IMG/VR virus record: IMGVR_UViG_3300026484_000007
Location: 208,603 to 272,602 of that record
Length of the DNA stretch: 64,000 nt
Strand: one strand, 5' to 3'
In this document: positions 10,975 to 63,671 of the stretch, piece by piece
Numbering within the stretch: the stretch's first letter is position 1
Layout: the number at the start of each line of letters is the position of its first letter
Position numbers and translations under genes: made by a program
Notes under the pieces: generated by a model
What the model saw: only the letters and a program-made list of their open reading frames with translations
Told to the model about the DNA's origin: nothing
Database searches by the model: none

Positions 10975-10992
10975 TATTAAAAAGGAGAATGT

Positions 10993-11724: not shown

Positions 11725-11773
11725 TAGAAGATAATATAAAATAAAAATAAAAATTTTATAAAAGGAAGCGAAT

Positions 11774-46621: not shown

Positions 46622-46737
46622 TCTTTTTTAGATCACTTCTACGGGAGTGATCTTTTTTAGATCACTTTCAAAATTGAATTAAAAATAATTAAAAATAATT
46701 AAAAATAATTAAAAATAAAAAACTTAAAGGATTCAAA

Positions 46738-47057: not shown

Positions 47058-49277
47058 ATGGGAATAGTAGTAAAGACTAAAGAAATATATCCAATTTACG
47101 AAGAAAATTGTAAAGCGAATCAAGAGATTGCTCTTGTCGAAGCAGCTCGAGATGATAATAATGAAAATAATATACATTATAAAGCTAAAGATAGCACTCA
47201 AGTATATTCATATATTCATATAAATGGAGATACTGGAGAAATCACTTTAACCACTCAAGGGGTCGAAGCAGTAAATACAGATTACGATGATAAATCATTA
47301 GAATTATGGTCTCTTGATTTTACGGTGATAGCTGAAGATACTGAACTTGGAGATTCAATAGAGATTGATCTTAGTGTTCCAGTTGTAAGAGTTAACGACA
47401 GCGCTCCTGTTGTAACAGATGAAATTAAATATCCTATTTATAGTAAAGATGTTAAAGAAGGTCAAAGAGTTCTAGATGTAAGAACTATGTATCCAAGTTA
47501 TTATAGAGTAATTAATACATCTTCAAAATATTTTACATTTAATGATTCTCAATTTGGTGCTTGTACATTAACTGCTGATGGAGTAGAACAAGCACAAAAA
47601 ATCTTTGAAAACGGCGGAAATCAAATGAGATTAGATGTCGAATTCGAAGATCAATATTGTGGATTAAAAACCACTCGTACTTATTATATTGATTTAATTG
47701 AAGGTTCTGCGGTTGAATACGTTCCTAAGAAATCAATTCTTGAGAATATCGGAGTTGTTCTTGGAATAGATATTTCTTCAAAATTTGAAACTTTTAAAAC
47801 CGATGCTGAAATAAAAAATAAATATTTATTAAATCAATATTTTGATTCTTTAAGTATAGATGATTTAGGTTTACTTGAAAATATTTTCAAAGGTGTAGCT
47901 TATTTTGAAACTGAAATGGGCAATAAATATAATGACACTAATCAATCAAATGAAATCATTAATGAATATAAATTAATGAAATCAATCGAAACTAACAGAA
48001 CTTCTTTAATCAATAAAGGTATAAAACATTATTTACAAGCGCTTGATAAAGATTATACTTTAAATTATAATTTTCAAGGGAAGATTAGCAATTCCAATTT
48101 TAATCTTGGGACAAATTTATTTAATTATCAGGATGATCAATCAATTAAAAATATTTTTTATAATGTAATGTATTTAAAAGATCAAATTGAGAATCTTGTT
48201 GATAAAAAAATTCAATCGAACAATGAATCAATTTCATCAGTTGTTGGTCAAGCTTTTAAAGCAGTACATGATGAATTCAATTATGTGAATAAAAGTATTC
48301 TGATGAATCATTTTACAAAACTTGGTAAATATATTTGGAATACAAATAAACGGGTTTATAAAATCTTGACTAATCAAAATAAATTAACTAATGAAGTTTC
48401 TGTGGATTCATCAAGAATTCAAGATATAATAAATTTATTATTTATTGATGATACTAGTACTTTACCTACGTCAGCGGCAGCTAATTATGATACATATAAA
48501 GGTGATCATACTACGGAAACTCTTACTGGAACATCAAAAGGATTTTTTGGATGGATCAAAGCGATCGATGATAGATACTTAGAAGACTGGGGAGTTAATG
48601 ATAACGATCGTTGGCAATTCACGAATAGCACTGATGGTGATGGTGAATTAAAATATGATAAATTAACTAGATTAATTGCTGCTACAGCTGGTGATGCAGA
48701 CGAAGTTGCTCGAATACTAATGGAAACAGATGATATTACTTTTGAGCAAGGTAAATCAAAATTTTATTTTATCGGTGGAGATAGTAATTGTAAATTACAA
48801 TTATCCGCAGATGCAGGTGTTACGACTATAGTTGAAGCTGATGAATTCGATGGAACTGCATCTTCTGCGAAATACGCGGATATCGCCGAATATTATTTAG
48901 CAGATAAAAATTATGAAAAAGGAACTGTATTAGTATTTGATTCTTCAGATTCCGATTTTGAAATTACCCTTGGATCTTCTAAAGATCAATATCCGATAGG
49001 GATCGTTTCTTCAAGACCAGGATATATATTAAATTCATCTAAAGCAGAAATTCCAAATTGGAATTTAATTGCGTTAAAAGGAAGAGTTCCTGTAAAAATT
49101 AATTCAAAAATAAAAGAGATCAAAAAAGGATCTTTATTGTATGCTAGTGTATCTGAGCCAGGAACTGCTACGCCAGAAAAAGATGATTCTATAGGAAACA
49201 AACCTATCGCAATTATCATTCAAAGATATAATAAAACTGATGATGAAAACATACTCGTTAATTGCTACGTTATTTAA
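47058..49277 (+). CDS. tail fibre/spike with cadherin-like Ig domains and C-terminal intramolecular chaperone (peptidase G2-like)
   Basis: INGDTGEITL...VVRVNDSAPV cadherin motif; GTASSAKYADIAEYY...IGIVSSRPGYILN...IALKGRVPVK. Confidence 0.75.
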   Translation: MGIVVKTKEIYPIYEENCKANQEIALVEAARDDNNENNIHYKAKDSTQVYSYIHINGDTGEITLTTQGVEAVNTDYDDKSLELWSLDFTVIAEDTELGDSIEIDLSVPVVRVNDSAPVVTDEIKYPIYSKDVKEGQRVLDVRTMYPSYYRVINTSSKYFTFNDSQFGACTLTADGVEQAQKIFENGGNQMRLDVEFEDQYCGLKTTRTYYIDLIEGSAVEYVPKKSILENIGVVLGIDISSKFETFKTDAEIKNKYLLNQYFDSLSIDDLGLLENIFKGVAYFETEMGNKYNDTNQSNEIINEYKLMKSIETNRTSLINKGIKHYLQALDKDYTLNYNFQGKISNSNFNLGTNLFNYQDDQSIKNIFYNVMYLKDQIENLVDKKIQSNNESISSVVGQAFKAVHDEFNYVNKSILMNHFTKLGKYIWNTNKRVYKILTNQNKLTNEVSVDSSRIQDIINLLFIDDTSTLPTSAAANYDTYKGDHTTETLTGTSKGFFGWIKAIDDRYLEDWGVNDNDRWQFTNSTDGDGELKYDKLTRLIAATAGDADEVARILMETDDITFEQGKSKFYFIGGDSNCKLQLSADAGVTTIVEADEFDGTASSAKYADIAEYYLADKNYEKGTVLVFDSSDSDFEITLGSSKDQYPIGIVSSRPGYILNSSKAEIPNWNLIALKGRVPVKINSKIKEIKKGSLLYASVSEPGTATPEKDDSIGNKPIAIIIQRYNKTDDENILVNCYVI

Positions 49278-49307: not shown

Positions 49308-49345
49308 AAAAGTGATCTTTTTAAGATCACTTTTTTTGTCGTTAG
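49308..49345 (+). terminator. terminator on a GATC palindrome, with GTCGTTAG tail
   Basis: AAAAGTGATCTTTTTAAGATCACTTTTTTT. Confidence 0.7.
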
Positions 49346-49377: not shown

Positions 49378-49515
49378 GAAAAAACAGCGATCCTAAAACG
49401 TTGCGCTTCTATGGATACACAAAGATATATACGAGTTCTAAAGTTTTATAGTTTTAGAACTCGTATATATCCTTAGTATCGAAAAAAGATGCTACTTAGA
49501 AAATCAAAATTTTTC
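49378..49515. repeat. ~140-bp dispersed palindromic element, copy F
   Basis: Same core. Confidence 0.85.
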
Positions 49516-49546: not shown

Positions 49547-50509
49547 ATGCTAAATGAAATTACTTTATTTATCACAAAAGAATGCAATATGAACTGCGAT
49601 TATTGTACTCAAGAAAATAATAAAGATTCGATAGATGATAATGAATCGCTAGAGTTAACAATCAAAACAATTGAAAGTTTAATCAAAGATAAAAAATTAA
49701 GTTCAAAAACTTCGTGGCATTTTTTTGGAGGAGAACCTACTTTAAAATTCGATAAAATGTTAAAATTATATAAGTATTTAAAAACTCAAGGCTTTAAAAA
49801 TTTTAAATTATTTACTAATGGATTAATAAAAGAATCTTTTTTAGATCACATTCCAAATGATATAATGATTTCGATATCCTACGATGGATTGTCTCAGAAA
49901 AATCGATCTTCAAAAGATCGTGATAAAATTATTAATAATATTAAATATTTAATTACTAAAAATAATTTTGAAAAAATAAATTTCATTTATGATGAATTTT
50001 TATTAAAAAATTATTTTTTTATTAGTGATCTTTTAAAGATCCCTGAGTGGAAAATTACACATAGTTTAAATAGAAATTTTTATTGGTGGACTCCAGAAAG
50101 AATTGAAAAATATTTAACCGAATTTAATGCTTTAGCAGAATATAATTTTTTTGCAAATATATATAGAAAAAATAAAGATATCGAAGATATATATTTTATG
50201 TATTTTCAAAATATATTTAATCAATCAAAAAGATCGATTTTAGGATGTGGGCTTAAAGATTCTCGAATAAGTATATATCCAGATGGATCTATCAAAAATT
50301 GCGGAATTAGATCATTTAATGAAGATGATTATGTTTCTCAAAAAGAGATTGAATCTTTTTGTAAAAATTGTGAAGCTTATAAATTCTGCGATAAAAAATG
50401 CCCTATCGAAATGAAAAAATTTCCAGAGCTTTTTCAATATTCTTTTTGTGAAATAAAAATAAATGAAATTAAAACGCTTGAAAAATATTTTAAAAAGGAA
50501 CTTAAATGA
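49547..50509 (+). CDS. radical SAM protein with SPASM-type C-terminus
   Basis: CNMNCDYC, FFGGEP, TNG, SYDG; CG...C...CKNC..FCDKKCP. Confidence 0.9.
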   Translation: MLNEITLFITKECNMNCDYCTQENNKDSIDDNESLELTIKTIESLIKDKKLSSKTSWHFFGGEPTLKFDKMLKLYKYLKTQGFKNFKLFTNGLIKESFLDHIPNDIMISISYDGLSQKNRSSKDRDKIINNIKYLITKNNFEKINFIYDEFLLKNYFFISDLLKIPEWKITHSLNRNFYWWTPERIEKYLTEFNALAEYNFFANIYRKNKDIEDIYFMYFQNIFNQSKRSILGCGLKDSRISIYPDGSIKNCGIRSFNEDDYVSQKEIESFCKNCEAYKFCDKKCPIEMKKFPELFQYSFCEIKINEIKTLEKYFKKELK

Positions 50510-50916
50510 ATTCAGAACTTATCTTATACAAGTATCTTATTACAGATAAAATACGATCTTTAAAAGATCTTTTTAATCTTAATCCAGATGAAAAATTAAT
50601 TTATGCAATAGATAATTTATTAGAGAGCGCTATTCTTTTTGAATCTTTAAATGATTCAAAACTAGAAAAAATTTCAGAAGAATTATTTAATCTTCATGAA
50701 AGATTATATTCGGAAATAGAAAATATAGTTCATAAAAAATTCCAAAATGAATTATTAAATGAAAAAATTATTAAAGAAAAGCAAGAGTACTACGAAGAGA
50801 TCTTAAAAAGATCACAAACTGATTTAGACAAAAAAGAATATGAAGATATCGAATCTCTCGAATTTCAATTGAAAAAGGATATAAGAAAGGATACAAGAAA
50901 GGATACTAAAAAATGA
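50506..50916 (+). CDS. hypothetical helical protein
   Basis: Translationally coupled to both neighbours. Confidence 0.7.
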   Translation: MNSELILYKYLITDKIRSLKDLFNLNPDEKLIYAIDNLLESAILFESLNDSKLEKISEELFNLHERLYSEIENIVHKKFQNELLNEKIIKEKQEYYEEILKRSQTDLDKKEYEDIESLEFQLKKDIRKDTRKDTKK

Positions 50917-52100
50917 AAGAAGCATCAAAAAATACAATAGAAAACACGGTAGTGATCGATTTAATTACTAATAAAGATTGCAATATGAATTGCAAGTATT
51001 GCTTTGAGCAAGGACATTTTAAGAATACTCAGCTAACCGAAGAAACAATAAATAATATTTTTAATTATATTAAATTATTAAAAGAAAAAGATCCTTCGGT
51101 AAATTTTGAATTTATTTTAATTGGTGGAGAACCGAGCATCGCAAAAAATTTAAATTTATTTTTAGAAAAATTGAAAACCTTAGACGAAAAGGATCTAAAA
51201 AAGATCACTTATATGACAAATGGATTATCAAAAGAAAAAATTGAAAATCATTTAAATCAAATAAATAATCTAATTGATCCTAAAAAGATCGAACTTCAAA
51301 TTTCTTATGATGGAAAAGGTTTTCATGATAAAAATAGATTATTTAAACAACAAGGGAATTTAATTCCTACAAGTGCTATTATAAAAGAGAATATCGATTA
51401 TTTTTATAATTCTGGTAAATGTTATGTTACTATAAAAAGTACAATAACTTATCAAGATTTATTAGATAAAGGATCTTTATTAGATACATTAAACGATTTT
51501 GAAGAATTAAATGAAAAATACCATATATTATATTCCGTTTCAGAAGACAAAACATCGTTCGAAATTCCTGAGAATTTATTTAAAAATAATTTAAATAAAT
51601 TATTAGAATCGTTATTGATCTTAGAAAGATTCGAAAAAGATTTCTTTAAAAAGAAAGGATATTTTTTGACTAAATGGTTTAATGGTGCTAGTTATAGAGC
51701 AGATAATAAAACTTGTGGTATGGGAAATAAAATTATTAGTTTTTCTCCAACGGGAGATGCAATGGCTTGCCATGCAATTGAATACTACGACACTAATGAA
51801 TCTAAAAAAGATCTTTTATACGGAAATATCAATCAAGACTCTTTAGATAGCATTTATGAAAATTTTGAAAGAATTAAAAAAGAAATCAATAATAATAAAT
51901 ACAACCAATGCATAGATTGCAAAACTTTATATTGTAGCAAATGTCCAGCATACACTTTCGAATCTTTAAAAGATCTAAAAAAGATCTATACTGGATCTAA
52001 ATTAAATAATCAAAATTTATGCAACTTTTTTAATTTATTAAGCATAAATATTTATAGAGTTTATAAAGAATTAAATATTCTTGATAAGCTGAAAAAATAA
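50913..52100 (+). CDS. radical SAM/SPASM protein
   Basis: CNMNCKYC, IGGEP, TNG, ISYDG; CGMG...ACH...CIDC...CSKCP...C. Confidence 0.92.
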   Translation: MKEASKNTIENTVVIDLITNKDCNMNCKYCFEQGHFKNTQLTEETINNIFNYIKLLKEKDPSVNFEFILIGGEPSIAKNLNLFLEKLKTLDEKDLKKITYMTNGLSKEKIENHLNQINNLIDPKKIELQISYDGKGFHDKNRLFKQQGNLIPTSAIIKENIDYFYNSGKCYVTIKSTITYQDLLDKGSLLDTLNDFEELNEKYHILYSVSEDKTSFEIPENLFKNNLNKLLESLLILERFEKDFFKKKGYFLTKWFNGASYRADNKTCGMGNKIISFSPTGDAMACHAIEYYDTNESKKDLLYGNINQDSLDSIYENFERIKKEINNNKYNQCIDCKTLYCSKCPAYTFESLKDLKKIYTGSKLNNQNLCNFFNLLSINIYRVYKELNILDKLKK

Positions 52101-52112
52101 AAAGGAGAAATT

Positions 52113-52682
52113 ATGGCTAAGTGTACGTGCGAAGTGATTAGTGCGTGTTCTTCCACTTGGAACTCAAAGTATTGTAGTACAGTTTGTGCATGTAATGACG
52201 TTACATCTTGTTATGACGATTGTAGCGCTTATCTTTCGACATCTCAAGCTAGAGACGATTTTGATAGCACTAAAGAAGATGAGGTTAATACTGCTAGAGA
52301 TAATTTTAAAGGTAAAAAAGTAATTAAAATTTCCGATTTAAAAGCAATTCGAAAATATTTGAATGATATTGCTAAAAGTAAAAAAGATAGTTCTATCACA
52401 ATAGATGAATTAGATAAAAGTAAAGGAGATACCGTTGAAGCAGCTGACGCAGATGATCCAAGAAAAACTAGTTTAAAAATTGGCCTTTTATCTGGAGTAA
52501 ACGCTGCGAGCGCAACATATGATCTTGGAAATATGGGAGAAATTGAATCAGAAGACATCATTGATGGATCGCAATTAAAAACTATAGCCGAATCAATTGT
52601 TGATATAGCTTTATCATGCAGATGTGTTGGTTATTCAGCACAAACTTGTAATGATCAATGTGTTTGCGATTGTAATTATTAA
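52113..52682 (+). CDS. Cys-rich protein, candidate radical-SAM substrate / tail-tip component
   Basis: 8 Cys in the first 37 aa and 6 Cys in the last 21 aa (CVCDCNY end). Confidence 0.6.
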   Translation: MAKCTCEVISACSSTWNSKYCSTVCACNDVTSCYDDCSAYLSTSQARDDFDSTKEDEVNTARDNFKGKKVIKISDLKAIRKYLNDIAKSKKDSSITIDELDKSKGDTVEAADADDPRKTSLKIGLLSGVNAASATYDLGNMGEIESEDIIDGSQLKTIAESIVDIALSCRCVGYSAQTCNDQCVCDCNY

Positions 52683-52729
52683 AAAATTATTAAAATTATT
52701 AAATTTAAATTTATTAAAAAGGAGAAAAT

Positions 52730-53521
52730 ATGTATTATACTTATGTATTTATGAAAAAAGTTTCAGACAATTATTATCAACCGATATCAATAGATAGAGT
52801 TTTTCAAACAGTAGCACCATTCTTAAAATTAGATAATTTTGATTTAGCAGCAAGAATTGATGATCAAGCAATTCGATTAATAGAATATGCGTGGAAGAAT
52901 AAAGAATTTCCTTTAATAAAAGCAGATTATGGAGATATGGTTAGCGTCGACAAAATCATTGTTTTTTCAATGGAAGAATTCAGAAAAGAAATTCTCGCGA
53001 CTAGAAATCCTAATAAATTAAAAGGTAAAACAATTGAAGAGCTATTCGACGATGAAGATTTAAAAAATGAATATCTTTTTGAAAAAAGAAAAGAAGAAAT
53101 TCTTAAAGAGATTCTTAATCAATTCTTCCCAATGTTTAACGTTTGGGATTTAATGAATATGATTAAATATTTAGAATACTGGGGAATTTTATTTAATGAA
53201 GGAATTGTAATTTCTGAAAAAAATAAAGAAGACAAATTCATCGAAATCATTGAAAAAGACGATGATTATCTTTTAGAGATCCTTGAAAAATTCTTAGAAG
53301 CAAAAGAAAGATTTGATAAATTCAATAAAAGTTATTCAGTATATAATAATTTAATTCAAGAGATGGATGAAGTTATGTATTGGGATTTTGATACTTTCGA
53401 AGAAGCTATAGGCACTCTTGATAAAATAAGAAATACATATGTAGCACCAGAAAATTATACTTGGGATAGCGATCTTTATTTATTTAGAAAAATAAGAAAG
53501 GAATATCTTGATAAAAAATAA
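52730..53521 (+). CDS. hypothetical protein
   Basis: 263 aa, AAGGAG RBS. Confidence 0.75.
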   Translation: MYYTYVFMKKVSDNYYQPISIDRVFQTVAPFLKLDNFDLAARIDDQAIRLIEYAWKNKEFPLIKADYGDMVSVDKIIVFSMEEFRKEILATRNPNKLKGKTIEELFDDEDLKNEYLFEKRKEEILKEILNQFFPMFNVWDLMNMIKYLEYWGILFNEGIVISEKNKEDKFIEIIEKDDDYLLEILEKFLEAKERFDKFNKSYSVYNNLIQEMDEVMYWDFDTFEEAIGTLDKIRNTYVAPENYTWDSDLYLFRKIRKEYLDKK

Positions 53522-54377
53522 AAAGGATCGTAAGACTCATTATCATATAATCCTTTCGGATTATTGTGATCGAAGCTGTCCTTATTGTATAAATTCTTCG
53601 GATCAAAATGAGATCATATCAAAAGACGATTACGATTTAATTTTAAAAGAATTAAAAAAAGTTATTACAACAGATGATCTGCAAAAGATCGTTATCGAAT
53701 TTAATGGAGGGGAATTTACTTTAATAAAAAATATTGAATGGTATTTTGAAAGATTATCTTTTATTTTTCAAGATCTATCTAAAAGTGATCTAAAAAAGAT
53801 ACAAATAATACTTACTACGAATTTCATAGCAGAAAATATTATTTATAATAATATTTATGATCACTTGAGATCTTTTTTAGATCATGATCAAATATGGTTT
53901 TGGGTAAGCACGCACTATGATTATACTGAAGAAAATTATATTCAAAAATTAAAAGATTTTTTAAGTTATCATAAAATTAAAAATAATAAAATAAATTACT
54001 GGTTTAACACATTAACCGTTTCGAAAAAACATAATAAATACATTAATGATCTTAGAAAGATCGCAAAAGAAAAATTAAAAGAATTATTTGATTTTCATAA
54101 CATTATTTTTAGTACTTCCAATTTAATTCCAGTTTCTTCGCTGAAAAAGAATATATATTGGTATGACACCAAACCTAAATTATGCTCGGGAAATATTTAT
54201 TTAATTATGTATAAAGGAGTGAGCAATTATTGTAAAGAAGAATTTTTTTCTTTCAATGAGATCTTTAAAAGATACGAACAGGATAATCAAGGTAATCGAA
54301 GTATACTTTGTAAGAAATCCTGCACCGATCAAAAATTTGATGAAGAATTATTTAAGCCTAAATATTTAAAAAAATAA
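53508..54377 (+). CDS. radical SAM protein
   Basis: CDRSCPYC, NGGEF, TTN. Confidence 0.85.
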   Translation: MIKNKKDRKTHYHIILSDYCDRSCPYCINSSDQNEIISKDDYDLILKELKKVITTDDLQKIVIEFNGGEFTLIKNIEWYFERLSFIFQDLSKSDLKKIQIILTTNFIAENIIYNNIYDHLRSFLDHDQIWFWVSTHYDYTEENYIQKLKDFLSYHKIKNNKINYWFNTLTVSKKHNKYINDLRKIAKEKLKELFDFHNIIFSTSNLIPVSSLKKNIYWYDTKPKLCSGNIYLIMYKGVSNYCKEEFFSFNEIFKRYEQDNQGNRSILCKKSCTDQKFDEELFKPKYLKK

Positions 54378-54423
54378 TTAAAATAATTAAAATAATAAAA
54401 ATAATAAAAAGCAAGGGAAATTA

Positions 54424-55191
54424 ATGCAATATGTATATTATAGACTCGACCCTAAATATTTACAAGAAAAATATAAATTAGAAAGTACTCTTCAAGATTT
54501 TTTTTATGGATATCAAACGTTTATAAATCCAGAAAAGAAATACATAATTAAAAACATTCCTCCATTAATCAATCAAGATAAAGACGGCTATTTTTATTTT
54601 TGGAATAAATTTTTATCGTTATTTTCATATGCTAGCGATCATCATCGATTTACTTCGCAAGATATATATATTGATCACGATGTTTTTTTATTTAATTTGC
54701 CTTCCAAAGATACCGAGAATTCCAATAATTTTTATTATACTTATGGGATTTATAATAGCACTAATAAAGTTAGTGCAGCTTGTTTTTCTTTAAAAAAATT
54801 TGAAGATTTTAAATATTATTTTAAAGTTTTTTTTAGTTGTAATGATTATATTAGAAAGAAGCCAGAAAAATTCGAAGAATTTTTATTAACAGAGTGGATA
54901 AAATCATTCATGTCCGACAAAAATTCTGAAAAATTAAAGAAAAAAATCATAAAGTTTTCAGAAAATAAGATAACGTTAGAAAAGCAAAAAACCTTTAAAA
55001 ATTTTATACTACATTATCAGACAAATTTTTTATATCAATTTATTATAAAAAATAAAGATAGTATTAAAATATTTTTAAAAGAAAAATTTTATATTAAAAC
55101 ATTACATGATCTTTTAAAGATCCTTAAAGATCTTGAAAAGATTTATAAGGATTTAAAAAATGAAAAAATATCAAAAAGTTATTTTTTATAA
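54424..55191 (+). CDS. DxD-motif (GT-A-like) protein, paralog of 56135-56761
   Basis: RLDPKY..KY and YIDHD shared with the paralog. Confidence 0.45.
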   Translation: MQYVYYRLDPKYLQEKYKLESTLQDFFYGYQTFINPEKKYIIKNIPPLINQDKDGYFYFWNKFLSLFSYASDHHRFTSQDIYIDHDVFLFNLPSKDTENSNNFYYTYGIYNSTNKVSAACFSLKKFEDFKYYFKVFFSCNDYIRKKPEKFEEFLLTEWIKSFMSDKNSEKLKKKIIKFSENKITLEKQKTFKNFILHYQTNFLYQFIIKNKDSIKIFLKEKFYIKTLHDLLKILKDLEKIYKDLKNEKISKSYFL

Positions 55192-55945
55192 ATTAAATTT
55201 TTTCAATGGTAATCTTTTTTACGCATTTGAATATTTTGAATATCTACGAAAAAATAATTGGAAATTAATAATAGATTTAAATGGATCTTTAAAAGATCCA
55301 TTTAAACTTCCAATAAATAAAAAAATTTTATTTGAAGCGTTTCGAGAAAAATACAGTAAAAAATATCATAATTTATTTACTGAAATTATTTTCTTGAAAC
55401 CTTCAACTTTTTTTGTCGCCGATAAAATCCTTGTATTAGATCAAACCAGCATAAAATATTTAAATAAAACATTCGTGTCTAAAAAGATTATTTATAATTA
55501 TGGAGACGATGAGCGATCTTTAAAAGATCCTTTGAATAATAAAAATAATAAAAATAATAAAAATATTATTACGATAGGAGATAAAGATATCGGTTGTAAA
55601 ATTCAATATCATTATCCATTAAAATTAAATTTTAAAATCTTAAAACGTTTAAATTATAAAAGGATCCAAAAAAGATCCTTTTTGGAAAATAAAACAAAAA
55701 ACATCTATGAAAGAAAAAGAAATGTTAAAGATTTTCATTATACTTTCGATACTTTAATTTATAAAAAAGAAAATTTCTGGGAAAGAGCAAATCGATTAAT
55801 TCCAGAATGTAAATTTTATAATAAAGAAATAATATTTGAAAATAAAGATAAAAGAATTGATAGCGCAAATCTTCGCTATCAATCGTCGTGGAAAGATTAT
55901 AGTTTATATCATAGTGATTTTAAAGATTTCGTGGAAAATCTTTGA
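55160..55945 (+). CDS. glycosyltransferase-like (GT-B?) protein, paralog of 59644-60579
   Basis: GNLFYAFEY, AFREKY and RLIPECKFYNKEI shared with the paralog. Confidence 0.4.
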   Translation: MKKYQKVIFYKLNFFNGNLFYAFEYFEYLRKNNWKLIIDLNGSLKDPFKLPINKKILFEAFREKYSKKYHNLFTEIIFLKPSTFFVADKILVLDQTSIKYLNKTFVSKKIIYNYGDDERSLKDPLNNKNNKNNKNIITIGDKDIGCKIQYHYPLKLNFKILKRLNYKRIQKRSFLENKTKNIYERKRNVKDFHYTFDTLIYKKENFWERANRLIPECKFYNKEIIFENKDKRIDSANLRYQSSWKDYSLYHSDFKDFVENL

Positions 55946-56075
55946 TTTTTAAAGTAGCATCTATTTTCGATACAAGCGATATAAAAGCAGTTCTAAAAAA
56001 TTTAGAACTGCTTTAGAACTCGTATATATCTTTGGGTATCTAATGAAGCGCAACGTTTTAGGATCACGAGTTTTC
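55934..56075. repeat. ~140-bp dispersed palindromic element, copy G (inverted)
   Basis: Reverse complement reads GAAAACTCGTGATCCTAAAACGTTGCGCTTC...GATGCTAC. Confidence 0.85.
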
Positions 56076-56134
56076 AAAGGAAAAAATGAAAGTATAAATA
56101 AATTTATAAATAAATCAAAGTCAAGGAATTATTT

Positions 56135-56761
56135 ATGGACGATTTAAAATTTATTAGAATAGATCCAAAATATATGGAGGATAAATATAAATACGAAGAC
56201 GAAATAACTTATATTATTTTTAAAGATCTTTTTAATATAGAAATAAAATACATTGAACCGATTTATAAAAATTTTTATAAAGAAAGAAAATATATAGATA
56301 AAAAATGGGAAAAGATTTTGACACTGATACATTATTCTTTTTCAGATTCATCTAAAAAATATTATATAGATCATGATATAATTATTAACCCTCGTGTATT
56401 ATCAATGAATAAAATAAACGCGACTTTTGGAGCATATTGCAAGACAGGTAATAAGCTAATGGCTAGTTTTATAGATATGAAAATTATTCAAAATTATAAA
56501 AATATTTTATCTGAAAATATTTTTTTATTAAAAGATATAAATAATGAAGAAATATTATTTAAAGAAATTATTTCAAAATTTAATAAATTTAACAATGTAA
56601 ATTATTTCGATTTACCATTTAATACTATAGAAAATTTAACTTTTCAAATGCATTATAATATTAATTTTATACAACCTTTAATTATAAAAAATAAAAAAAT
56701 AAAAAATAAAAAATATTTAATAAATTTGACAAAAAAACTTAGGAGAATTTATGAAAAATAA
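56135..56761 (+). CDS. DxD-motif protein, paralog of 54424-55191
   Basis: RIDPKYMEDKY, YIDHD. Confidence 0.45.
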   Translation: MDDLKFIRIDPKYMEDKYKYEDEITYIIFKDLFNIEIKYIEPIYKNFYKERKYIDKKWEKILTLIHYSFSDSSKKYYIDHDIIINPRVLSMNKINATFGAYCKTGNKLMASFIDMKIIQNYKNILSENIFLLKDINNEEILFKEIISKFNKFNNVNYFDLPFNTIENLTFQMHYNINFIQPLIIKNKKIKNKKYLINLTKKLRRIYEK

Positions 56762-57845
56762 AAATGATAGATTAAATAAATTTAATAAATTTAATAAATT
56801 TAATAAATTTAATAAATTTAACTCTATAGAAGATCTTTATAATAACTCATGTTTAAAATATGATCATTCGATAATAGATATCAAAAATGAATTTATTAAA
56901 TTAAATAAAATTTTAAAATTAAATGATGAGAGAATTAAAATTGATACGGGATTTGCTTGTAATGCTAAATGTTATTTTTGCTATTATCGATCTCATTTAA
57001 AAGATCCATTTCTTGAATTATCAGAAATTAAAAAACAGATCTTTCATGCAAAACAAATGAATTTTAAACAGGTGGAATTTAGTGGAGGAGAAAGTACTTA
57101 TCATCCTAAATGGTTTGATATGCTTGAAATTGCTCAAAAGTTAAATTTAAAATCCAGTTTGGTTTCAAATGGATTATTATTATCAAACTATGATTTTATT
57201 AAAAAAAGTTATAATTTAGGACTTAAAGAAGTTTTATTTAGTGTTCATGGTTATAAAGAAAATCATGATAAAATGATTGGGGTTGAAGGAGCGTTCGAGA
57301 AGATAATCCAAGCTATAAAATATTCTAAAGAACTGGGTATTCTACCAAGGATAAATATAACAGTCAATCTCATGAATATCAAAGTAATTCCTAATATAGT
57401 AAATTATTTATTGAATATAGGAGTGTATCAATTTAATTTTATAGAAATAAATAATTCTCATGAAGCTTTTAAAACAGCAAGAAAACAGCATTCGGAAATA
57501 TATAATTCTTTTAAAGAGCTTGAACCGATTTTTGATAAAATAATTGAAACTTATAAAAGAGATGATTGTTTAAATATTAGATATTTACCGTATTGTAAAA
57601 TCAATGAAAAGTATCATAAATACATGAAAAATTATATCCATCACTGGTTCGATCATTTTGATTGGAATCCATTGTTTGTGCATAGAACCGATTTTACCAC
57701 GGATAAAATTAAAACTTGGAAAAAAAGAGATTTATCTGTTTTCATAAAACAATTAAAAGCAACAAGAGATTATTGGTATTATAAAGATGAAGATTGCGAA
57801 AGTTGTAAATTTAATGGAGTATGCGATGGATATAAAAAACAATAA
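56751..57845 (+). CDS. radical SAM protein
   Basis: CNAKCYFC, FSGGE, SNG, SVHG; C-terminal CESC...CDG; N-terminal NKF repeats. Confidence 0.92.
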   Translation: MKNKNDRLNKFNKFNKFNKFNKFNSIEDLYNNSCLKYDHSIIDIKNEFIKLNKILKLNDERIKIDTGFACNAKCYFCYYRSHLKDPFLELSEIKKQIFHAKQMNFKQVEFSGGESTYHPKWFDMLEIAQKLNLKSSLVSNGLLLSNYDFIKKSYNLGLKEVLFSVHGYKENHDKMIGVEGAFEKIIQAIKYSKELGILPRINITVNLMNIKVIPNIVNYLLNIGVYQFNFIEINNSHEAFKTARKQHSEIYNSFKELEPIFDKIIETYKRDDCLNIRYLPYCKINEKYHKYMKNYIHHWFDHFDWNPLFVHRTDFTTDKIKTWKKRDLSVFIKQLKATRDYWYYKDEDCESCKFNGVCDGYKKQ

Positions 57846-57865
57846 AAAATTTAAGGATTAATTTT

Positions 57866-58732
57866 ATGCGAAATACAGATGAAATACAAAATTTTTATTT
57901 AAAATCAATGGCTCAGACTCCACTTTACAATACATTATATTTAAATACAGTTTTTACTAAAAAATGCAATTTTAATTGCAGTTATTGTTTCCAAGATAAA
58001 ACAGATGAAATTCTCGATTTGAACGTATTTGAAAATATTTTAAAAAAATTATTAAAATTTAAAAATATTGATAAATATATTTTTTCCATAATGGGAGGGG
58101 AATTATCTTTATTAGATGCTAAGTATATAAATAATATTTTTAATATATTTAATAAAGAATTTAAAGAATTAAAAAAATTAAAAAAAGATATCAAAATAGT
58201 CTTCGTTACTAATTTTTCTACGGATTTTAAAAATATTTATGAATTATATTTTTCAAAAGATTTTCTTAGTAAAAACGTTTTATTAGATTTAGCTATATCT
58301 CATCATCATCAAAATGAAAATCAATTATTCAATAAAGCAATAAATGATTTTATTGATCATAAATTATTGCTTCAAGAAAATATATTATTTACTATCAAGA
58401 CATTTAATATTAATTCATACGAAAAATTTATCAATTTAAAAAACGAATTCTTTAAAAAACATAAAAAATATCAAAATGATTTTTTAATCGAATTCGGTGA
58501 TAAAAATTGGAAAATTCAAAAAAGAATTTTTGCAAAAATAAAAAAATTTACAAGACCAGTAATATGTAATTCTTGGAATTATAATTTAGATTCAAATGGA
58601 AAATTATATCATTTATGTAATTTAAAAGAAATCGATATAAATGAAATAAAACAGATCCCTATTTTTTGCAATAAAAGGTGTAGCAATTATGAAATCGAAC
58701 AAGACACTTATAAAAGACATATACAAAAATAA
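57866..58732 (+). CDS. radical SAM protein
   Basis: CNFNCSYC, MGGELS, TNFS. Confidence 0.88.
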   Translation: MRNTDEIQNFYLKSMAQTPLYNTLYLNTVFTKKCNFNCSYCFQDKTDEILDLNVFENILKKLLKFKNIDKYIFSIMGGELSLLDAKYINNIFNIFNKEFKELKKLKKDIKIVFVTNFSTDFKNIYELYFSKDFLSKNVLLDLAISHHHQNENQLFNKAINDFIDHKLLLQENILFTIKTFNINSYEKFINLKNEFFKKHKKYQNDFLIEFGDKNWKIQKRIFAKIKKFTRPVICNSWNYNLDSNGKLYHLCNLKEIDINEIKQIPIFCNKRCSNYEIEQDTYKRHIQK

Positions 58733-59657
58733 ATTGATAAGATTTTCTGATCATTTAGCTCAGCCAATAAAACCCAAAATAAATATCAGCACCGTTGTTA
58801 CATATCAATGTTCTCTTAATTGTCCGTATTGTAATCAAAAAATAGATAGAAATAATATTTTAAAATCAAAAAAAGATTTTAAATTAATTAATTTAATTCT
58901 TTATGAAAAAGTATTACAAAAAATGTTTGATGAATTTTTAAGAAATAAAAATATCAATTTAAACGATTTTAATGTTGCTTTTAATATTTTAGGAGGAGAA
59001 TTATCAGAATTGCCTTTAAATTATAATATCGAATTAATTAACATTCATCAGAGAATTATTAAAAAATATAATCTAAACGTCGAAATAACATGGTTATCAA
59101 ATTTTACTCAAAATAATAATTATTTTAAAAAGATATTCGATGAGTTAAATAATTTTAATCATAAAGAAAATGATAAAATATATAATTTTGAATTATTATT
59201 TAGCATTCATGGGGAATATTTAAAAAATCATTCAAAAGAAAAAATAAAAGATAAATTTATTGATTTATTTAAATACAAGAATATTAACGAACATACATGT
59301 ATTAAAATATTTGGAAAACATCTCAGCAAATACTTTATAAATGAACTTCATAAAAATCATAATTTTAATAATTCTTTTGAAATTGGAGATTTAAATTTTC
59401 TATCTTACTCAAGACAATTTAAAAATAATTATGATTTAATTAGACCGGTTAAATGTTATAATTTTAATTATGATATAACGCCTGACTTATCAATTATTAA
59501 TCAATGTAATAAAGATCCCGAAGGGAAAACTATAAGAATGAATTATTTTAATTTTAAATGCAATGATATTAAAAAATGTAATAAAAAATGCCCGATAGGG
59601 GATTTTGAATTCAATGTTTATAAAAAGGTTATGAAAAAGGATAATGAAAATGAATAA
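58689..59657 (+). CDS. radical SAM protein (paralog of preceding gene)
   Basis: CSLNCPYC, LGGELS, SNFT, RPVKC. Confidence 0.88.
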   Translation: MKSNKTLIKDIYKNKLIRFSDHLAQPIKPKINISTVVTYQCSLNCPYCNQKIDRNNILKSKKDFKLINLILYEKVLQKMFDEFLRNKNINLNDFNVAFNILGGELSELPLNYNIELINIHQRIIKKYNLNVEITWLSNFTQNNNYFKKIFDELNNFNHKENDKIYNFELLFSIHGEYLKNHSKEKIKDKFIDLFKYKNINEHTCIKIFGKHLSKYFINELHKNHNFNNSFEIGDLNFLSYSRQFKNNYDLIRPVKCYNFNYDITPDLSIINQCNKDPEGKTIRMNYFNFKCNDIKKCNKKCPIGDFEFNVYKKVMKKDNENE

Positions 59658-60579
59658 AATTAATTTGAGCAAAAATGATAAAATATTTAATTTTATTGAT
59701 AATAAAAATACTATTTATTTAACATATTCCCCCGCTAAAGATGAATACGAAAGAATTTGTGGACATACTTTCGAAGTAATGGATTATTATCTTTTATTAA
59801 AAGATAATGGTTACAATGCAAAAATATTGATTTTTGATAAATTTAAAAATAAAAATAAATTATTTAACGCATGGGAAGATAAATACGTTTTGGATGATTA
59901 TCCAAATTATAAAAAAGATGTAATATTTAAAAATATTAATTTTAATTCTATAAATAGATTATATATTCCTGGATATTTAATTATTACTTCTGGAATTGAT
60001 ATTTTTTGGGACCAAATATTTAAAACATTGACTAAAAAAATAATTTCTTTTCAATGCGAAGAATTTGATTATTCTGAGTATTTAAAATTTAAAAATTTTT
60101 ATTTGCTTAGAGATGAAAGAATTTATCAAAATAAAAATTCTTCAGAAAAGACATTTAATTATCTTAAAAAAATATATTTTAAAAGATATAAAAAAATAAA
60201 TAATATAAAAACCAAAAAAACACTTGTATATGTAAATTCAAAATTAAAAGATTTATCAGAGGATCAAATACGATTTTTCATTAAAAACTACAAAATCGAA
60301 AATATATTATTTATATCTGGAACTATACTTACCAAAGAACAAGAGCAAAAATATTTAAAATATGGTGAATTAAAATATGCTCCAGTTGAAAATTTATTTG
60401 ATCAATTCGATAATTATTTAGTAACTCCTAATACAAGGAACTTCGATTGTAGTCCAAGATTCGTAGCGGAATGTAAATTTTATAATAAAGAAATATTCGT
60501 TCCTTTTAATCCAAAAGAAGATTTAGGTTTTTATTGGAGATGGTATGATATAAAAATTGATCGAAAAATTTTATTTTAA
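59644..60579 (+). CDS. glycosyltransferase-like protein, paralog of 55160-55945
   Basis: GHTFEVMDY, AWEDKY, PRFVAECKFYNKEI. Confidence 0.4.
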   Translation: MKMNKINLSKNDKIFNFIDNKNTIYLTYSPAKDEYERICGHTFEVMDYYLLLKDNGYNAKILIFDKFKNKNKLFNAWEDKYVLDDYPNYKKDVIFKNINFNSINRLYIPGYLIITSGIDIFWDQIFKTLTKKIISFQCEEFDYSEYLKFKNFYLLRDERIYQNKNSSEKTFNYLKKIYFKRYKKINNIKTKKTLVYVNSKLKDLSEDQIRFFIKNYKIENILFISGTILTKEQEQKYLKYGELKYAPVENLFDQFDNYLVTPNTRNFDCSPRFVAECKFYNKEIFVPFNPKEDLGFYWRWYDIKIDRKILF

Positions 60580-60617
60580 AAATAATTTTTTTTACTAGAA
60601 TTATCAAAAGGAATAAT

Positions 60618-61622
60618 ATGGATAAAATTTTAACTTTAGAAAATATTAAAGCATTAGAAATCGGTTTAAATAATACATGCAATCTTGCTTGCCCAATGTG
60701 CACGAGACAAGAATTGAAATCAAAAGTAAAAAATTTATTAAATAACTGTGAACTCAATTTAGATATTCTGAAAAAAAGGATAAATGAATTAAATATTGAA
60801 AGAATAGAGATCGTTGGTTCAATAGGAGAACCATTATTTTATTCTTCTATTTTTAATTTAATTGAATTTTTAAATGAAAAGAATATAAGAATAATTATTA
60901 GTACTAATGGTTCTATTAAAAATTTTAATTTTGAAAAGCTTGGAAGATTATTAAAAGAAAATGATATAATTAGATTTCCTATGGATGGAACTTTTGAAAC
61001 TCATTCAATTTATAGAAAAAATAGTGACTTAAACTTAGTATTAAATAATATAAAAAAATTAAAAAAAGAAACTAAAGCTACAATAATTCTTCAAACTATT
61101 ATATTTAAATATAATGAAAATCAATTAGATGAAATTTTTAAAATATTTAAAGAATCAGAAGCTGATTTATTTGAACTTACTCATACAGGGTATTCCGAAT
61201 ATTTAGATGATCAAGTTAGACCAGTTGATGAATTATTAAAATTATATAAAAAAAACGATAAGATCGCCAATGAGAAAAAAAATATTATAAACTGCGAAGC
61301 GATAAAAGATAAAAAAATTTATCTTAATTGTTTTGGATATTTTTTACCATGCGAAAATCTTGATGAATATGTATTTTTGCATAAAGATGATATTCATTCT
61401 TGCTCGGAAGCTAATCTTAATAAATTATTTTATCAAAATAATATGCAAGAAATAATTAAAGAAATTAATTCTATAATAAAAAATAAACAGAATTTCGTAG
61501 AATGCCATCAATCTTGCGGATTATTTAATAATATAATTAGAAAAAAATTTGATGTTTTCCAATTTACAAAAAACGGTGAAAAATATAAATTAAAAAAATA
61601 TAGATTATTATATAATGATTAA
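60618..61622 (+). CDS. radical SAM protein (twitch/SPASM-like tail)
   Basis: CNLACPMC, GSIGEP, STNG, MDG, PC..C...C. Confidence 0.9.
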   Translation: MDKILTLENIKALEIGLNNTCNLACPMCTRQELKSKVKNLLNNCELNLDILKKRINELNIERIEIVGSIGEPLFYSSIFNLIEFLNEKNIRIIISTNGSIKNFNFEKLGRLLKENDIIRFPMDGTFETHSIYRKNSDLNLVLNNIKKLKKETKATIILQTIIFKYNENQLDEIFKIFKESEADLFELTHTGYSEYLDDQVRPVDELLKLYKKNDKIANEKKNIINCEAIKDKKIYLNCFGYFLPCENLDEYVFLHKDDIHSCSEANLNKLFYQNNMQEIIKEINSIIKNKQNFVECHQSCGLFNNIIRKKFDVFQFTKNGEKYKLKKYRLLYND

Positions 61623-61690
61623 TAAATAATTATAAATAATTATAAATAATTATAAATAATTATAAATAATTATAAATAATTATAAATAAT
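61621..61690. repeat. tandem repeat (TATAAATAAT)x7
   Basis: Direct reading. Confidence 0.95.
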
Positions 61691-61704
61691 TAATGGGAGA
61701 TATT

Positions 61705-62787: not shown

Positions 62788-62855
62788 AAGAGTAAAAAGA
62801 GTAAAGAAAAGCAAATATAAAAAAATATAAAAAAAATAAAAATAAAAGGATTATT

Positions 62856-63671
62856 ATGCTAAATATAGAAAAAAAATTAAATGATTTAAAAGAAAGTTAT
62901 TATGATAAAATAATTTTAAAAAATTCTGAAATCTTTAAAAAAAATAATTTAAATCCTCATGATATAAAGATAACCAATAAAGTTATTTATATTCCTTTTA
63001 CCTACTGCGAATTTTTTCCAGTATATGAAATTAAAAACACGAAAGAAAAATTTGTTTTAAAATACGAATTTGAAGAATATAAAGAAATTTTAAAACAAGA
63101 ACTTGAAATATACATAAAGATTTTTGAAAAATTTAAAAACGATTTAAAAGAATCAAATATTAATATAAAAACGGAATTTTATAATATTGATTATTATAAA
63201 GATTATTTAGAAAATTATAAAATTTTTAAAAAAAATGATAAAGATTTATTATATATTCCATCGATAAAAAAAGATGAAAAAATAAAATATCTTAAAATTT
63301 TTAATTTTAAAAATCTAAATTTATTATATAAAGAATATGTTGGAACGAATTTTATTTATTTAGATTGGTACGATCTTGATCAAAAATTTACTTTAAAAAC
63401 TATTAATTTATTTGATCTTCTTAGTTTTGAATTTATTTATCCTCTTAAAAAATTAAATATTGATTTATTTTTATTTTATTACTATCTAGTAATTATTAGA
63501 AAATTCAATATATTTGAAGATAAAAATTTATCAAGTGAAAAATTTTGTAAAAGAATAATAGAATTTGAAAATTTTTTTACCGATATTAATGATTTTATAT
63601 TCAAAACACCTCAATTCAAAATATTTTTATCAAAAATAAAAAAATTTAAAGAGGAAAACGATGATTTATAA
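62856..63671 (+). CDS. hypothetical protein
   Basis: 271 aa with RBS. Confidence 0.7.
   Translation: MLNIEKKLNDLKESYYDKIILKNSEIFKKNNLNPHDIKITNKVIYIPFTYCEFFPVYEIKNTKEKFVLKYEFEEYKEILKQELEIYIKIFEKFKNDLKESNINIKTEFYNIDYYKDYLENYKIFKKNDKDLLYIPSIKKDEKIKYLKIFNFKNLNLLYKEYVGTNFIYLDWYDLDQKFTLKTINLFDLLSFEFIYPLKKLNIDLFLFYYYLVIIRKFNIFEDKNLSSEKFCKRIIEFENFFTDINDFIFKTPQFKIFLSKIKKFKEENDDL

What the first reader, a model, noticed from the sequence alone, without database searches (positions are those of the whole stretch)
49547..53521. Two SPASM radical-SAM enzymes next to a Cys-capped protein, directly after the tail-fibre genes
Seen: rSAM-SPASM, a small helical ORF, rSAM-SPASM, then a 189-aa protein with Cys-rich ends (CTC..C..C..CAC..C..C and CRC..C..CVCDCNY). 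Its middle has repeats (KVIKISDLKAIR, GDTVEAAD, DIIDGSQLKTIA) reminiscent of fibre-associated proteins. Known: SPASM rSAM enzymes install thioether crosslinks on Cys-rich peptides (ranthi/sactipeptides). Inference: RiPP-type chemistry applied to a virion protein, giving a post-translationally crosslinked or metal-loaded tail tip.
Basis: partly seen in the sequence, partly recalled or inferred. Interest (0 to 1): 0.75.

Follow-up and report, generated by a model that had tools for sequence, protein, structure and literature searches.

The report
Radical-SAM enzymes paired with phage fibre-like protein
A giant phage from a hydrothermal vent encodes two iron-sulfur radical enzymes directly upstream of a small cysteine-capped protein, and the same enzyme-protein pairing recurs in dozens of uncultivated phages, where the protein looks like a tail fibre, so phages may chemically cross-link a fibre protein in a way so far known mainly from small bacterial peptides.

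Summary
At 49547-54377 a tightly packed + strand operon encodes rSAM-A (320 aa, 7-Cys SPASM), a 136-aa helical protein, rSAM-B (395 aa, SPASM), a 189-aa protein with 14 Cys confined to residues 4-37 and 169-189, a conserved acidic 263-aa protein, and a third rSAM.

The Cys protein has only four distinct relatives in 1.8 billion representative proteins. All four sit in the same cassette.

Profile comparison (hhalign 97.7%, E 2e-12) and shared synteny tie this small family to a much larger, apparently undescribed phage family:
- It was found in 44 IMG/VR loci, against 7 hits in 596 Gb of prokaryote genomes.
- Its members end in tandem CxCxCNY heptads.
- In three of ten members scanned, the array is followed by the tail-fibre intramolecular chaperone domain Peptidase_S74.
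- 32 of 33 loci with enough upstream DNA carry homologues of rSAM-A/B directly upstream.

The preceding 739-aa gene carries a tail-fibre-type C-terminal domain that is itself syntenic with the module.

Most likely mechanism: PapB/CteB-like SPASM enzymes install thioether cross-links in the Cys arrays of a fibre-like structural protein. The enzyme-target pairing is well supported. The chemistry and the virion location are inferred. No paper describing this was found.

The parts
47058..49277 (+). 739-aa structural protein. Its C-terminal ~170 residues (about 48765-49277) form a tail-fibre-type domain that travels with the module in other phages.
   Evidence: phrog_19602 'tail fiber protein' matches window 48792-49181 at E 2.3e-9. 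phrog_22593 matches at E 3.4e-14. The C-terminus resembles PA5oct gp359, a virion structural protein found by ESI-MS/MS next to the long-tail-fibre distal subunit. Homologues of this domain lie upstream of the rSAMs in 12 of the CxCxCNY loci.
49308..49334 (+). Terminator-like hairpin after the 739-aa gene, followed by a structured 210-bp spacer ahead of the cassette.
   Evidence: 12-bp stem followed by a T run. The same GTGATCT stem closes the 970-aa gene at 46630-46653. Spacer sequence read.
49547..50509 (+). rSAM-A: radical SAM enzyme with a canonical 7-Cys SPASM domain and no RRE domain.
   Evidence: PF04055 E 4.9e-10. CX3CX2C at residue 13. The SPASM Cys 234, 252, 272, 275, 281, 285 and 301 are invariant. 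Best NCBIfam match is PapB, at 65.6 bits against a cut-off of 340. Best PDB match is CteB 5wgg, E 2e-17, aligned from CteB residue 95.
50506..50916 (+). 136-aa helical accessory protein, translationally coupled to both neighbouring genes.
   Evidence: Its ends overlap both neighbours by 4 bases. Homologues lie at the same position in L008 and L010. No family match.
50913..52100 (+). rSAM-B: radical SAM/SPASM enzyme, class III of the module's rSAMs.
   Evidence: PF04055 and PF13186 SPASM. PapB at 72.4 bits, and a full-length match to the CXXX-repeat maturase family at E 1.2e-13. CteB 5wgg at E 1.8e-20. Invariant Cys listed. Tree placement.
52113..52682 (+). 189-aa Cys-capped protein, the presumed target. 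N-terminal Cys cluster at 52122-52223, three central repeats at about 52308-52607, C-terminal signature C-R-C-x7-C-x3-C-x-C-x-C-N-Y at 52617-52679.
   Evidence: It has a strong ribosome-binding site 12 bases after rSAM-B. hhalign to the CxCxCNY fibre-like family gives Prob 97.7%, E 2.2e-12.
52730..53521 (+). 263-aa acidic accessory protein with an N-terminal alpha/beta domain and a C-terminal helical bundle. It is the most conserved gene of the cassette.
   Evidence: 43-47% identity to 5 relatives, always directly after the Cys gene. phrog_25260. Shorter homologues lie directly downstream of CxCxCNY genes in 10 of 36 loci. AF2 pLDDT 77.6, but no fold match.
53508..54377 (+). rSAM-C: a third, shorter radical SAM protein that overlaps the 263-aa gene.
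   Evidence: CX3CX2C at residue 20. PF04055 at 23.2 bits, below the cut-off. Present at this position in L002, L003, L013 and L016 but not in L008. Sits on a long, unplaced branch in the tree.

Best explanation
The 189-aa protein is a divergent, short member of a phage-specific family of small fibre-like structural proteins. These proteins carry cysteine arrays built from the unit CxCxC[N/H]Y.

Its two Cys-rich ends are most likely post-translational targets of the two SPASM radical-SAM enzymes encoded directly upstream. rSAM-A resembles class I and rSAM-B belongs to class III of the module's rSAMs. They most probably install thioether (sactionine or ranthionine type) cross-links, as their nearest characterised relatives PapB and CteB do.

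Because the enzymes lack an RRE domain and the Cys clusters sit at the extreme ends, the folded or helical three-repeat middle would serve as the recognition handle. The 136-aa helical protein and the conserved acidic 263-aa protein may help here, or may act as assembly chaperones. The finished protein is then proposed to join the virion, next to or on the fibre-type protein encoded just upstream.

Shown:
- gene content and the Cys motifs;
- homology to the larger family;
- conserved synteny;
- the enzyme class.

Inferred:
- that the protein is the substrate;
- the thioether chemistry;
- which enzyme modifies which end;
- the virion location.
For: 1. Operon structure: the genes overlap or lie 12-47 bases apart, and there is no internal terminator.
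2. The Cys protein has only one other representative cluster in 1.84 billion proteins. All 5 distinct members lie between an rSAM-B homologue and a 263-aa homologue.
3. A distant rSAM-B homologue (30% identity) is followed by a different Cys-rich protein with tandem CxCxCNY units, the same unit that ends the window protein.
4. The tandem unit occurs in 45 IMG/VR stretches against 7 in 596 Gb of prokaryote genomes. In 32 of 33 viral loci with at least 1.5 kb of upstream DNA, one to three rSAM-A/B homologues lie upstream on the same strand.
5. hhalign of the window family against this larger family gives Prob 97.7%, E 2.2e-12 over 104 non-Cys columns. Controls against an unrelated alignment give 0.4% and 0.1%.
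6. Three of ten larger-family members scanned carry Peptidase_S74 above cut-off directly after the array, one of them also matches tail-fibre PHROGs, and 19 of 44 loci have SDxRLK after the array.
7. The upstream 739-aa gene's C-terminal domain matches a tail-fibre PHROG and an MS-verified virion protein, and it is syntenic with the module elsewhere.
8. Both enzymes have complete 7-Cys SPASM motifs. Their best matches are PapB (ranthipeptide) and CteB (SCIFF thioether).
9. There is a precedent for SPASM rSAM thioether cross-links on a whole 28.8-kDa Cys-rich protein, CrpA/CrpC (PMC13692751).
Against: - There is no direct evidence of modification.
- All family matches of the enzymes are far below the curated equivalog cut-offs (at most 72 bits against 340), so the chemistry is not assignable.
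- The window protein has a single degenerate unit, no tandem array, no S74 domain and no match to phrog_26958.
- In L010 the cassette is not preceded by the fibre-type gene. In the window a terminator-like hairpin separates them.
- The structure model of the Cys protein is poor (pLDDT 39), and the complex prediction returned 'no answer'.
- CxC-rich arrays could equally be metal ligands.
- No RNA run was listed, and no isolate phage in the collection carries the family, so neither expression timing nor virion proteomics is available.
Confidence: 0.55

Rival explanations
1. Metal-loaded fibre. The CxC/CxCxC arrays are ligands for metal ions or Fe-S clusters along a trimeric fibre axis, by analogy with the HxH iron sites of the T4 gp37 fibre tip. 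The rSAM enzymes would then do something other than Cys cross-linking, for example modify other residues, or act only transiently.
For: Alternating Cys spacing suits inward-facing ligands on a beta-strand. Metallothionein-like CxC density is seen at both ends. The S74 domain implies trimeric fibres in the larger family. The T4 gp37 analogy comes from my own knowledge, not from a tool.
Against: This does not explain why one to three PapB/CteB-like SPASM maturases are almost invariably encoded directly upstream (32 of 33 loci). Known HxH fibres need no such enzymes. The enzymes' nearest characterised relatives act on Cys.
Confidence: 0.18
2. A non-structural RiPP-like product. The modified protein, or a fragment of it, is a diffusible or intracellular effector (a bacteriocin-like agent, a host-takeover factor or an anti-defence factor) rather than a virion part.
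For: The gene layout resembles a RiPP cluster, with maturases followed by a Cys-rich substrate. A terminator separates it from the structural gene. The L010 cassette lies away from fibre genes. The middle of the protein evolves fast, at 23-36% identity against 36-47% for its neighbours.
Against: There is no leader peptide (Cys begin at residue 4), and no protease, transporter or immunity gene in the cassette. The protein is homologous to a family with tail-fibre chaperone domains. It is syntenic with a tail-fibre-type domain in many phages.
Confidence: 0.12
3. An Fe-S or electron-supply accessory. The Cys-rich protein is a cluster scaffold or carrier, or a ferredoxin-like reductant, that serves the phage's eight radical-SAM enzymes.
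For: The phage has 8 rSAM genes within 14.5 kb. Marine phages rich in rSAM genes also carry Fe-S assembly genes (PMC5332604).
Against: It has no ferredoxin or IscU-type motif and no family match. It is homologous to proteins with up to 24 heptad repeats and S74 domains, which are not scaffold-like. The CP220-type rSAM cluster exists without it.
Confidence: 0.05
4. Chance neighbourhood. The Cys protein and the rSAMs are functionally unrelated genes that merely happen to be adjacent.
For: None beyond the absence of biochemical data.
Against: The order is conserved in 5 of 5 family members and in 32 of 33 loci of the wider family, across contigs of 23-41% GC.
Confidence: 0.03

Closest known systems
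PapB-family ranthipeptide maturases (NCBIfam NF047865) and CteB, the SCIFF thioether maturase (PDB 5wgg/5why)
   Same: They share the radical SAM CX3CX2C core and a 7-Cys SPASM domain, and they sit next to a Cys-rich target. They are the best matches for rSAM-A, rSAM-B and the rSAMs of the wider module.
   Different: Scores are far below the equivalog cut-offs (66-72 bits against 340). There is no RRE domain: the alignment starts at CteB residue 95-99. The target is a 189-aa protein with Cys at both extreme ends and no leader. The system is viral.
CrpC/CrpA of Methanococcus voltae (PMC13692751) and, from my own knowledge, QhpD/QhpC of quinohemoprotein amine dehydrogenase
   Same: A SPASM rSAM installs thioether cross-links on a whole Cys-rich protein with repeated Cys motifs rather than on a short peptide. 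A paralogous or accessory protein is encoded alongside.
   Different: CrpC has an RRE and belongs to TIGR04463, which rSAM-B matches at only 33 bits against 525. CrpA has a 47-residue leader-like N-terminus and a 17-residue repeat with CxxQ/D. It is cellular and not fibre-related.
CXXX-repeat peptide maturase system (TIGR04115, TIGR04119)
   Same: An RRE-less SPASM rSAM paired with a Cys-repeat target. rSAM-B aligns full length at E 1.2e-13. An ESM Atlas cluster of viral 308-aa proteins partly carrying PF27846 (rSAM target, Cxxx repeat) was listed as a weak lead.
   Different: The match is 51 bits against a cut-off of 350. The repeat here is a heptad, CxCxCNY, not CXXX. None of the Cys proteins matched any NCBIfam model or any model in the Pfam copy held.
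Tail fibres and tailspikes with a C-terminal intramolecular chaperone (Peptidase_S74, endosialidase type)
   Same: Three of ten scanned members of the wider CxCxCNY family carry this domain directly after the Cys array. The central domain of the window protein is homologous to theirs.
   Different: The window protein and its four close relatives have no S74 domain and only one Cys unit. In my searches I found no S74 fibre reported with Cys heptads or dedicated rSAM enzymes.
Radical-SAM plus amidinotransferase clusters of Campylobacter phages CP220 and CPt10 (PMC2853527)
   Same: The downstream part of the window (60618 to the end) is homologous: the amidinotransferase at 52.5% identity and the rSAMs at 38-51%.
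   Different: CP220 lacks rSAM-A/B, the Cys protein and the 263-aa protein. That cluster's function is also unknown, and it appears to be a separate module.

Membership tests
Radical SAM / SPASM maturases | CX3CX2C motif for the SAM-binding [4Fe-4S] cluster within a Radical_SAM domain | tested here: met
   Present at residue 13 of rSAM-A and residue 23 of rSAM-B. PF04055 above cut-off for both. Invariant in homologues.
Radical SAM / SPASM maturases | C-terminal seven-Cys SPASM motif for two auxiliary clusters | tested here: met
   rSAM-A has C-x17-C ... CX2CX5CX3C ... C. rSAM-B has C-x17-C ... CX2CX4CX2C ... C and a Pfam SPASM match at 23.8 bits against 21.5.
PapB-family ranthipeptide maturase (NF047865, equivalog) | Score at or above the curated cut-off of 340 bits | tested here: not met
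   65.6 bits for rSAM-A and 72.4 bits for rSAM-B. This is the best match, but only at superfamily or clade level.
RRE-dependent RiPP maturases (CteB, SCIFF type) | N-terminal RiPP recognition element (winged-helix domain) | tested here: not met
   The profile alignments to CteB begin at its residue 95-99, and the rSAM motif lies 13-23 residues from the N-terminus. The separate 136-aa protein is predicted to be helical and has no family match.
Classical RiPP precursor (sactipeptide or ranthipeptide) | Short precursor with an N-terminal leader, a C-terminal core, and a leader protease or exporter in the cluster | tested here: not met
   The protein is 189 aa. Cys start at residue 4 and end at the last-but-two residue. 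No protease or transporter was found in the cassette.
Thioether-cross-linked product | A -2 Da shift per link, loss of free thiols, and an S-C bond shown by MS/MS or NMR | not testable with these tools
   Needs expression and mass spectrometry.
Phage CxCxCNY fibre-like protein family (defined here) | Central three-repeat domain homologous across the family | tested here: met
   hhalign of A2 against A7 gives Prob 97.7%, E 2.2e-12 over 104 columns. Controls give 0.4% and 0.1%.
Phage CxCxCNY fibre-like protein family (defined here) | Tandem array of CxCxCNY heptads at or near the C-terminus | tested here: not met
   The window protein and its 4 close relatives have one unit, preceded by C-R-C-x7-C-x3. 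The wider family has 2-24 units.
Phage CxCxCNY fibre-like protein family (defined here) | rSAM-A/B homologues directly upstream, with a p263-like gene downstream and a p739C-type gene upstream | tested here: met
   The window has all three. In the wider family the counts are 32 of 33, 10 of 36 and 7 of 12.
Tail fibre with intramolecular chaperone (Peptidase_S74) | PF13884 domain at the C-terminus | tested here: not met
   There is no match anywhere in the window's genome. The domain is present in L152, L162 and L182 of the wider family.
Virion structural protein | Detected in purified particles | not testable with these tools
   No isolate phage in the collection carries the family. No RNA run was listed.

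The most novel reading that the evidence does not exclude
Many uncultivated phages build a tail-fibre-like virion protein whose cysteine heptad array is covalently cross-linked, or otherwise radically remodelled, by a dedicated set of up to three classes of phage-encoded SPASM radical-SAM enzymes. This would be RiPP-style chemistry used to make a structural part of a virus particle. The vent jumbo phage carries a minimal version, with a Cys cluster at each end and one enzyme for each.
Probability: 0.4. Interest if true: 0.9.

Novelty: new variant of a known kind. Interest (0 to 1): 0.8.

Why it matters
Radical-SAM/SPASM maturases are known as makers of small cross-linked peptides. Only very recently have they been shown to act on whole cellular proteins. 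A conserved viral module that aims two or three such enzymes at a fibre-like protein would be, as far as my searches found, the first enzymatically cross-linked virion component of this kind.

It could help explain a puzzle on record since 2010 (PMC2853527; see also PMC5332604): why some large phages carry many radical-SAM genes. It also gives enzymologists a family of repeat substrates (2-24 identical heptads) with matched enzyme classes.

Practically, such cross-links could stabilise receptor-binding fibres in hot, reducing or metal-rich habitats such as vents. The heptad-plus-enzyme pair could be a portable stapling system for protein engineering.

Tried and rejected
- DNA and protein searches of the isolate-phage collection with the cassette, the Cys protein, rSAM-B and a wider-family member found nothing, or only the S74 tail.
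- The search for related loci in IMG/VR with the Cys protein and with rSAM-B found no relatives.
- A DNA pattern for the full C-terminal signature returned only microsatellite-type noise plus known members in IMG/VR and in the metagenomes.
- AF2 of the Cys protein gave pLDDT 39, unusable for fold search.
- AF2 of the 263-aa protein was decent (77.6), but PDB and AFDB fold searches gave nothing at E<=0.001 or TM>=0.3. ESM Atlas gave no usable lead for it.
- The three-chain complex prediction gave 'no answer' and is not used as evidence.
- PDB profile searches with the Cys families gave only non-significant hits: a T4-like long-tail-fibre proximal subunit at E 0.21 and APP at E 0.98.
- The idea that the 136-aa helper equals the N-terminal extension of the L002 rSAM-B could not be shown (E 0.08).
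- No paralogue of the Cys protein exists in the genome.
- I looked by eye for a correlation between the presence of an N-terminal Cys segment and particular rSAM classes. It was not clean, so I make no claim.
- Read laying was not run, because only DNA contigs were on offer.

Full report
CONTEXT. The window is the last 64 kb of a 272.6-kb, 97%-complete IMG/VR virus record of about 27% GC. The phage carries split multisubunit RNA polymerase genes of the phiKZ type, a ribonucleotide reductase, a portal-like gene and a virion-structural-protein gene upstream of the finding. Near-identical DNA occurs in hydrothermal-vent metagenome runs from several studies. No RNA run was listed.

THE OBSERVATION.
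- The genes from 49547 to 54377 overlap by 4-14 bases or are 12-47 bases apart. Good ribosome-binding sites are present, and the scan found no + strand terminator between the genes.
- Both large ORFs are radical SAM proteins, and each has a complete seven-Cys SPASM motif that is invariant in its homologues.
- The 189-aa protein has 14 Cys, all within residues 4-37 and 169-187. The predicted proteome has 0.7% Cys.

THE NARROW FAMILY. An exhaustive HMMER search of 1.84 billion representative proteins found one true relative cluster (34% identity, E 1.7e-18). Looking up the contigs of that protein and of relatives of the neighbouring 263-aa protein gave five distinct Cys proteins in all.
- They share 25-36% identity.
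- The C-terminal signature C-R-C-x7-C-x3-C-x-C-x-C-[N/H]-Y is invariant.
- Four N-terminal Cys are invariant.
- Three repeats of a GDxIxA...L helix motif occupy the middle.
- Wherever the contig reaches, the order is rSAM-A, helper, rSAM-B, Cys protein, 263-aa protein. In L002 the helper is replaced by an N-terminal extension of rSAM-B. rSAM-C follows in most, but not in L008.
- In L008 the upstream 568-, 970-, 102- and 739-aa genes are also conserved. In L010 they are not.

THE LINK TO A LARGER FAMILY. A 30%-identical rSAM-B homologue (P0013) is followed by a different Cys-rich protein. That protein has four tandem CxCxCNY units, the same unit that ends the window protein.

A DNA pattern for two tandem units found 45 stretches in IMG/VR, but only 7 in 596 Gb of prokaryote genomes. 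At least two of those seven look like phage contigs with the same rSAMs. The ORFs are 160-430 aa and have this layout:
- often an N-terminal Cys/His-rich segment;
- a central domain with the same helix motif;
- 2-24 heptads.

In 19 of 44 loci the array is followed by SDxRLK.

Three of ten scanned members carry Peptidase_S74 above cut-off directly after the array. Peptidase_S74 is the intramolecular chaperone of tail fibres and tailspikes. One member also hits tail-fibre PHROGs, and the heptad region matches phrog_26958, a family of unknown function.

Profile-profile comparison of the narrow family with the larger family gives 97.7% probability and E 2.2e-12 over 104 mostly Cys-free columns. 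Controls against an unrelated alignment give 0.4% and 0.1%. The window protein is therefore a divergent member with its array reduced to one unit.

SYNTENY OF THE MODULE.
- rSAM-A/B homologues lie upstream on the same strand in 32 of 33 viral loci that have at least 1.5 kb of upstream DNA. There are usually two or three of them.
- A shorter homologue of the 263-aa protein (phrog_25260) follows the Cys gene in 10 of 36 loci. This count rests on BLAST with a single query, so it is a lower bound.
- A protein with the C-terminal domain of the window's 739-aa protein precedes the rSAMs in 7 of 12 loci with enough sequence.

That 739-aa C-terminal domain matches phrog_19602, 'tail fiber protein'. 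It does so directly in the window (E 2.3e-9) and more strongly in relatives (E 2.6e-20). It also resembles PA5oct gp359, which was detected in virions by MS and sits next to the long-tail-fibre distal subunit.

A maximum-likelihood tree of 68 rSAMs resolves three classes:
- rSAM-B's clade lies inside class III (support 94/88).
- rSAM-A's clade is sister to class I, with weak support (88/79).
- The short class II has no window member.
- rSAM-C sits on an unplaced long branch.

ENZYME CLASS. For rSAM-A, rSAM-B and the four wider-module rSAMs tested, the best NCBIfam match is the PapB ranthipeptide maturase family. Other Cys-peptide maturases follow (CcpM, SCIFF, CXXX-repeat, TIGR04463, QhpD). 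All are far below the curated cut-offs.

The best solved relative is CteB (E 1.8e-20 and 2e-17). The alignment starts after the region that, from my own knowledge of the structure, is CteB's N-terminal recognition domain. The enzymes thus belong to the Cys-directed SPASM maturase clade. They lack an RRE, and they cannot be assigned a reaction by homology.

MECHANISM. The best-supported reading is that the Cys arrays are substrates of these enzymes and become thioether cross-linked. There is a biochemical precedent on a whole protein in CrpA/CrpC (PMC13692751).

In the window version, two Cys clusters at the two ends face two SPASM enzymes of different classes. The middle domain, the helper and the acidic 263-aa protein are candidates for recognition or assembly. 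All of this is inference.

The main rival is that the alternating Cys are metal ligands in a trimeric fibre, as HxH motifs are in T4 gp37 (my own knowledge). This does not explain the near-obligate maturases, but it could coexist with cross-linking.

A diffusible RiPP-like product is disfavoured for three reasons: there is no leader, no protease and no transporter; the protein is homologous to S74-bearing proteins; and it is syntenic with a fibre-type domain. It is not excluded for the window's reduced version.

WHAT FAILED. Structure prediction of the Cys protein was poor. The complex prediction gave no answer. The 263-aa protein folds confidently, but nothing known resembles it.

LITERATURE. 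Nine full-text searches found no description of radical-SAM enzymes paired with phage fibre proteins or of the heptad.

Known background:
- Campylobacter phages CP220 and CPt10 (PMC2853527) and a marine T4-like virus (PMC5332604) carry 11-12 rSAM genes of unknown role.
- The far end of this window (60618 onwards) is homologous to the CP220 rSAM-amidinotransferase cluster. CP220 lacks the cassette studied here.

VERDICT. The system is a new variant of a known enzymatic kind, in a biological role I found no description of. Experimental proof of modification and of virion location is the missing step.

Noticed in passing
window 53508-63999: A dense run of further radical SAM genes (53508, 56751, 57866, 58689, 60618, and 63661, which is cut by the record end), interleaved with two pairs of paralogous unknowns (54424/56135 and 55160/59644). 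That makes 8 rSAM genes in 14.5 kb.
   Followed up: partly
window 60618-63999: This stretch is homologous to the 'five radical SAM plus glycine amidinotransferase' module of Campylobacter phage CP220. The amidinotransferase-like 61693-62787 is 52.5% identical to CP220 gp086, and the rSAMs are 38-51% identical to gp083/gp084. Together with the low GC, this hints at a host in the Campylobacterota.
   Followed up: partly
window 61625-61690: A 10-bp unit (TTATAAATAA) is repeated about seven times in tandem in the spacer just upstream of the amidinotransferase-like gene.
   Followed up: no
window 46630-46653 and 49308-49334: Two terminator-like hairpins share the same GTGATCT/AGATCAC stem, one after the 970-aa gene and one after the 739-aa gene. 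This may be a phage-specific terminator motif.
   Followed up: no
window 49400-49480: An 18-bp perfect inverted repeat (ATATATACGAGTTCTAAA ... TTTAGAACTCGTATATAT) lies in the 270-bp spacer ahead of rSAM-A. It may be a regulatory element.
   Followed up: no
window 56751-56830 and about 55570-55600: There are in-frame low-complexity repeats: NKF repeated five times at the N-terminus of the 364-aa rSAM, and NNK repeats inside the 261-aa protein.
   Followed up: no
L157:4685-7282 and L164:7389-9455: Three or four paralogous CxCxCNY fibre-like genes lie in tandem behind one set of rSAMs. Each has four heptads and an SDxRLK end but a different middle region. This looks like diversification of a receptor-binding part.
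   Followed up: no
L157, L161, L163, L168, L174, L175, L181 (C-termini of the Cys proteins): Many family members stop about 12 residues after the Ser of SDxRLK. They keep only the first strand of the S74 chaperone domain, so autocleavage seems unlikely. The purpose of this stub is unexplained.
   Followed up: no
window 8825-13126 and 19419-22538: Split RNA polymerase beta/beta'-like subunits of the phiKZ type are present, so this is a jumbo phage with its own multisubunit RNAP.
   Followed up: no
L191 (Thermoplasmata MAG contig) and L195 (uncultured bacterium MAG contig): Two 'prokaryote genome' hits to the heptad pattern carry the full phage module (a p739C-like gene, rSAMs and the Cys protein). 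They are probably viral contigs binned into MAGs.
   Followed up: partly
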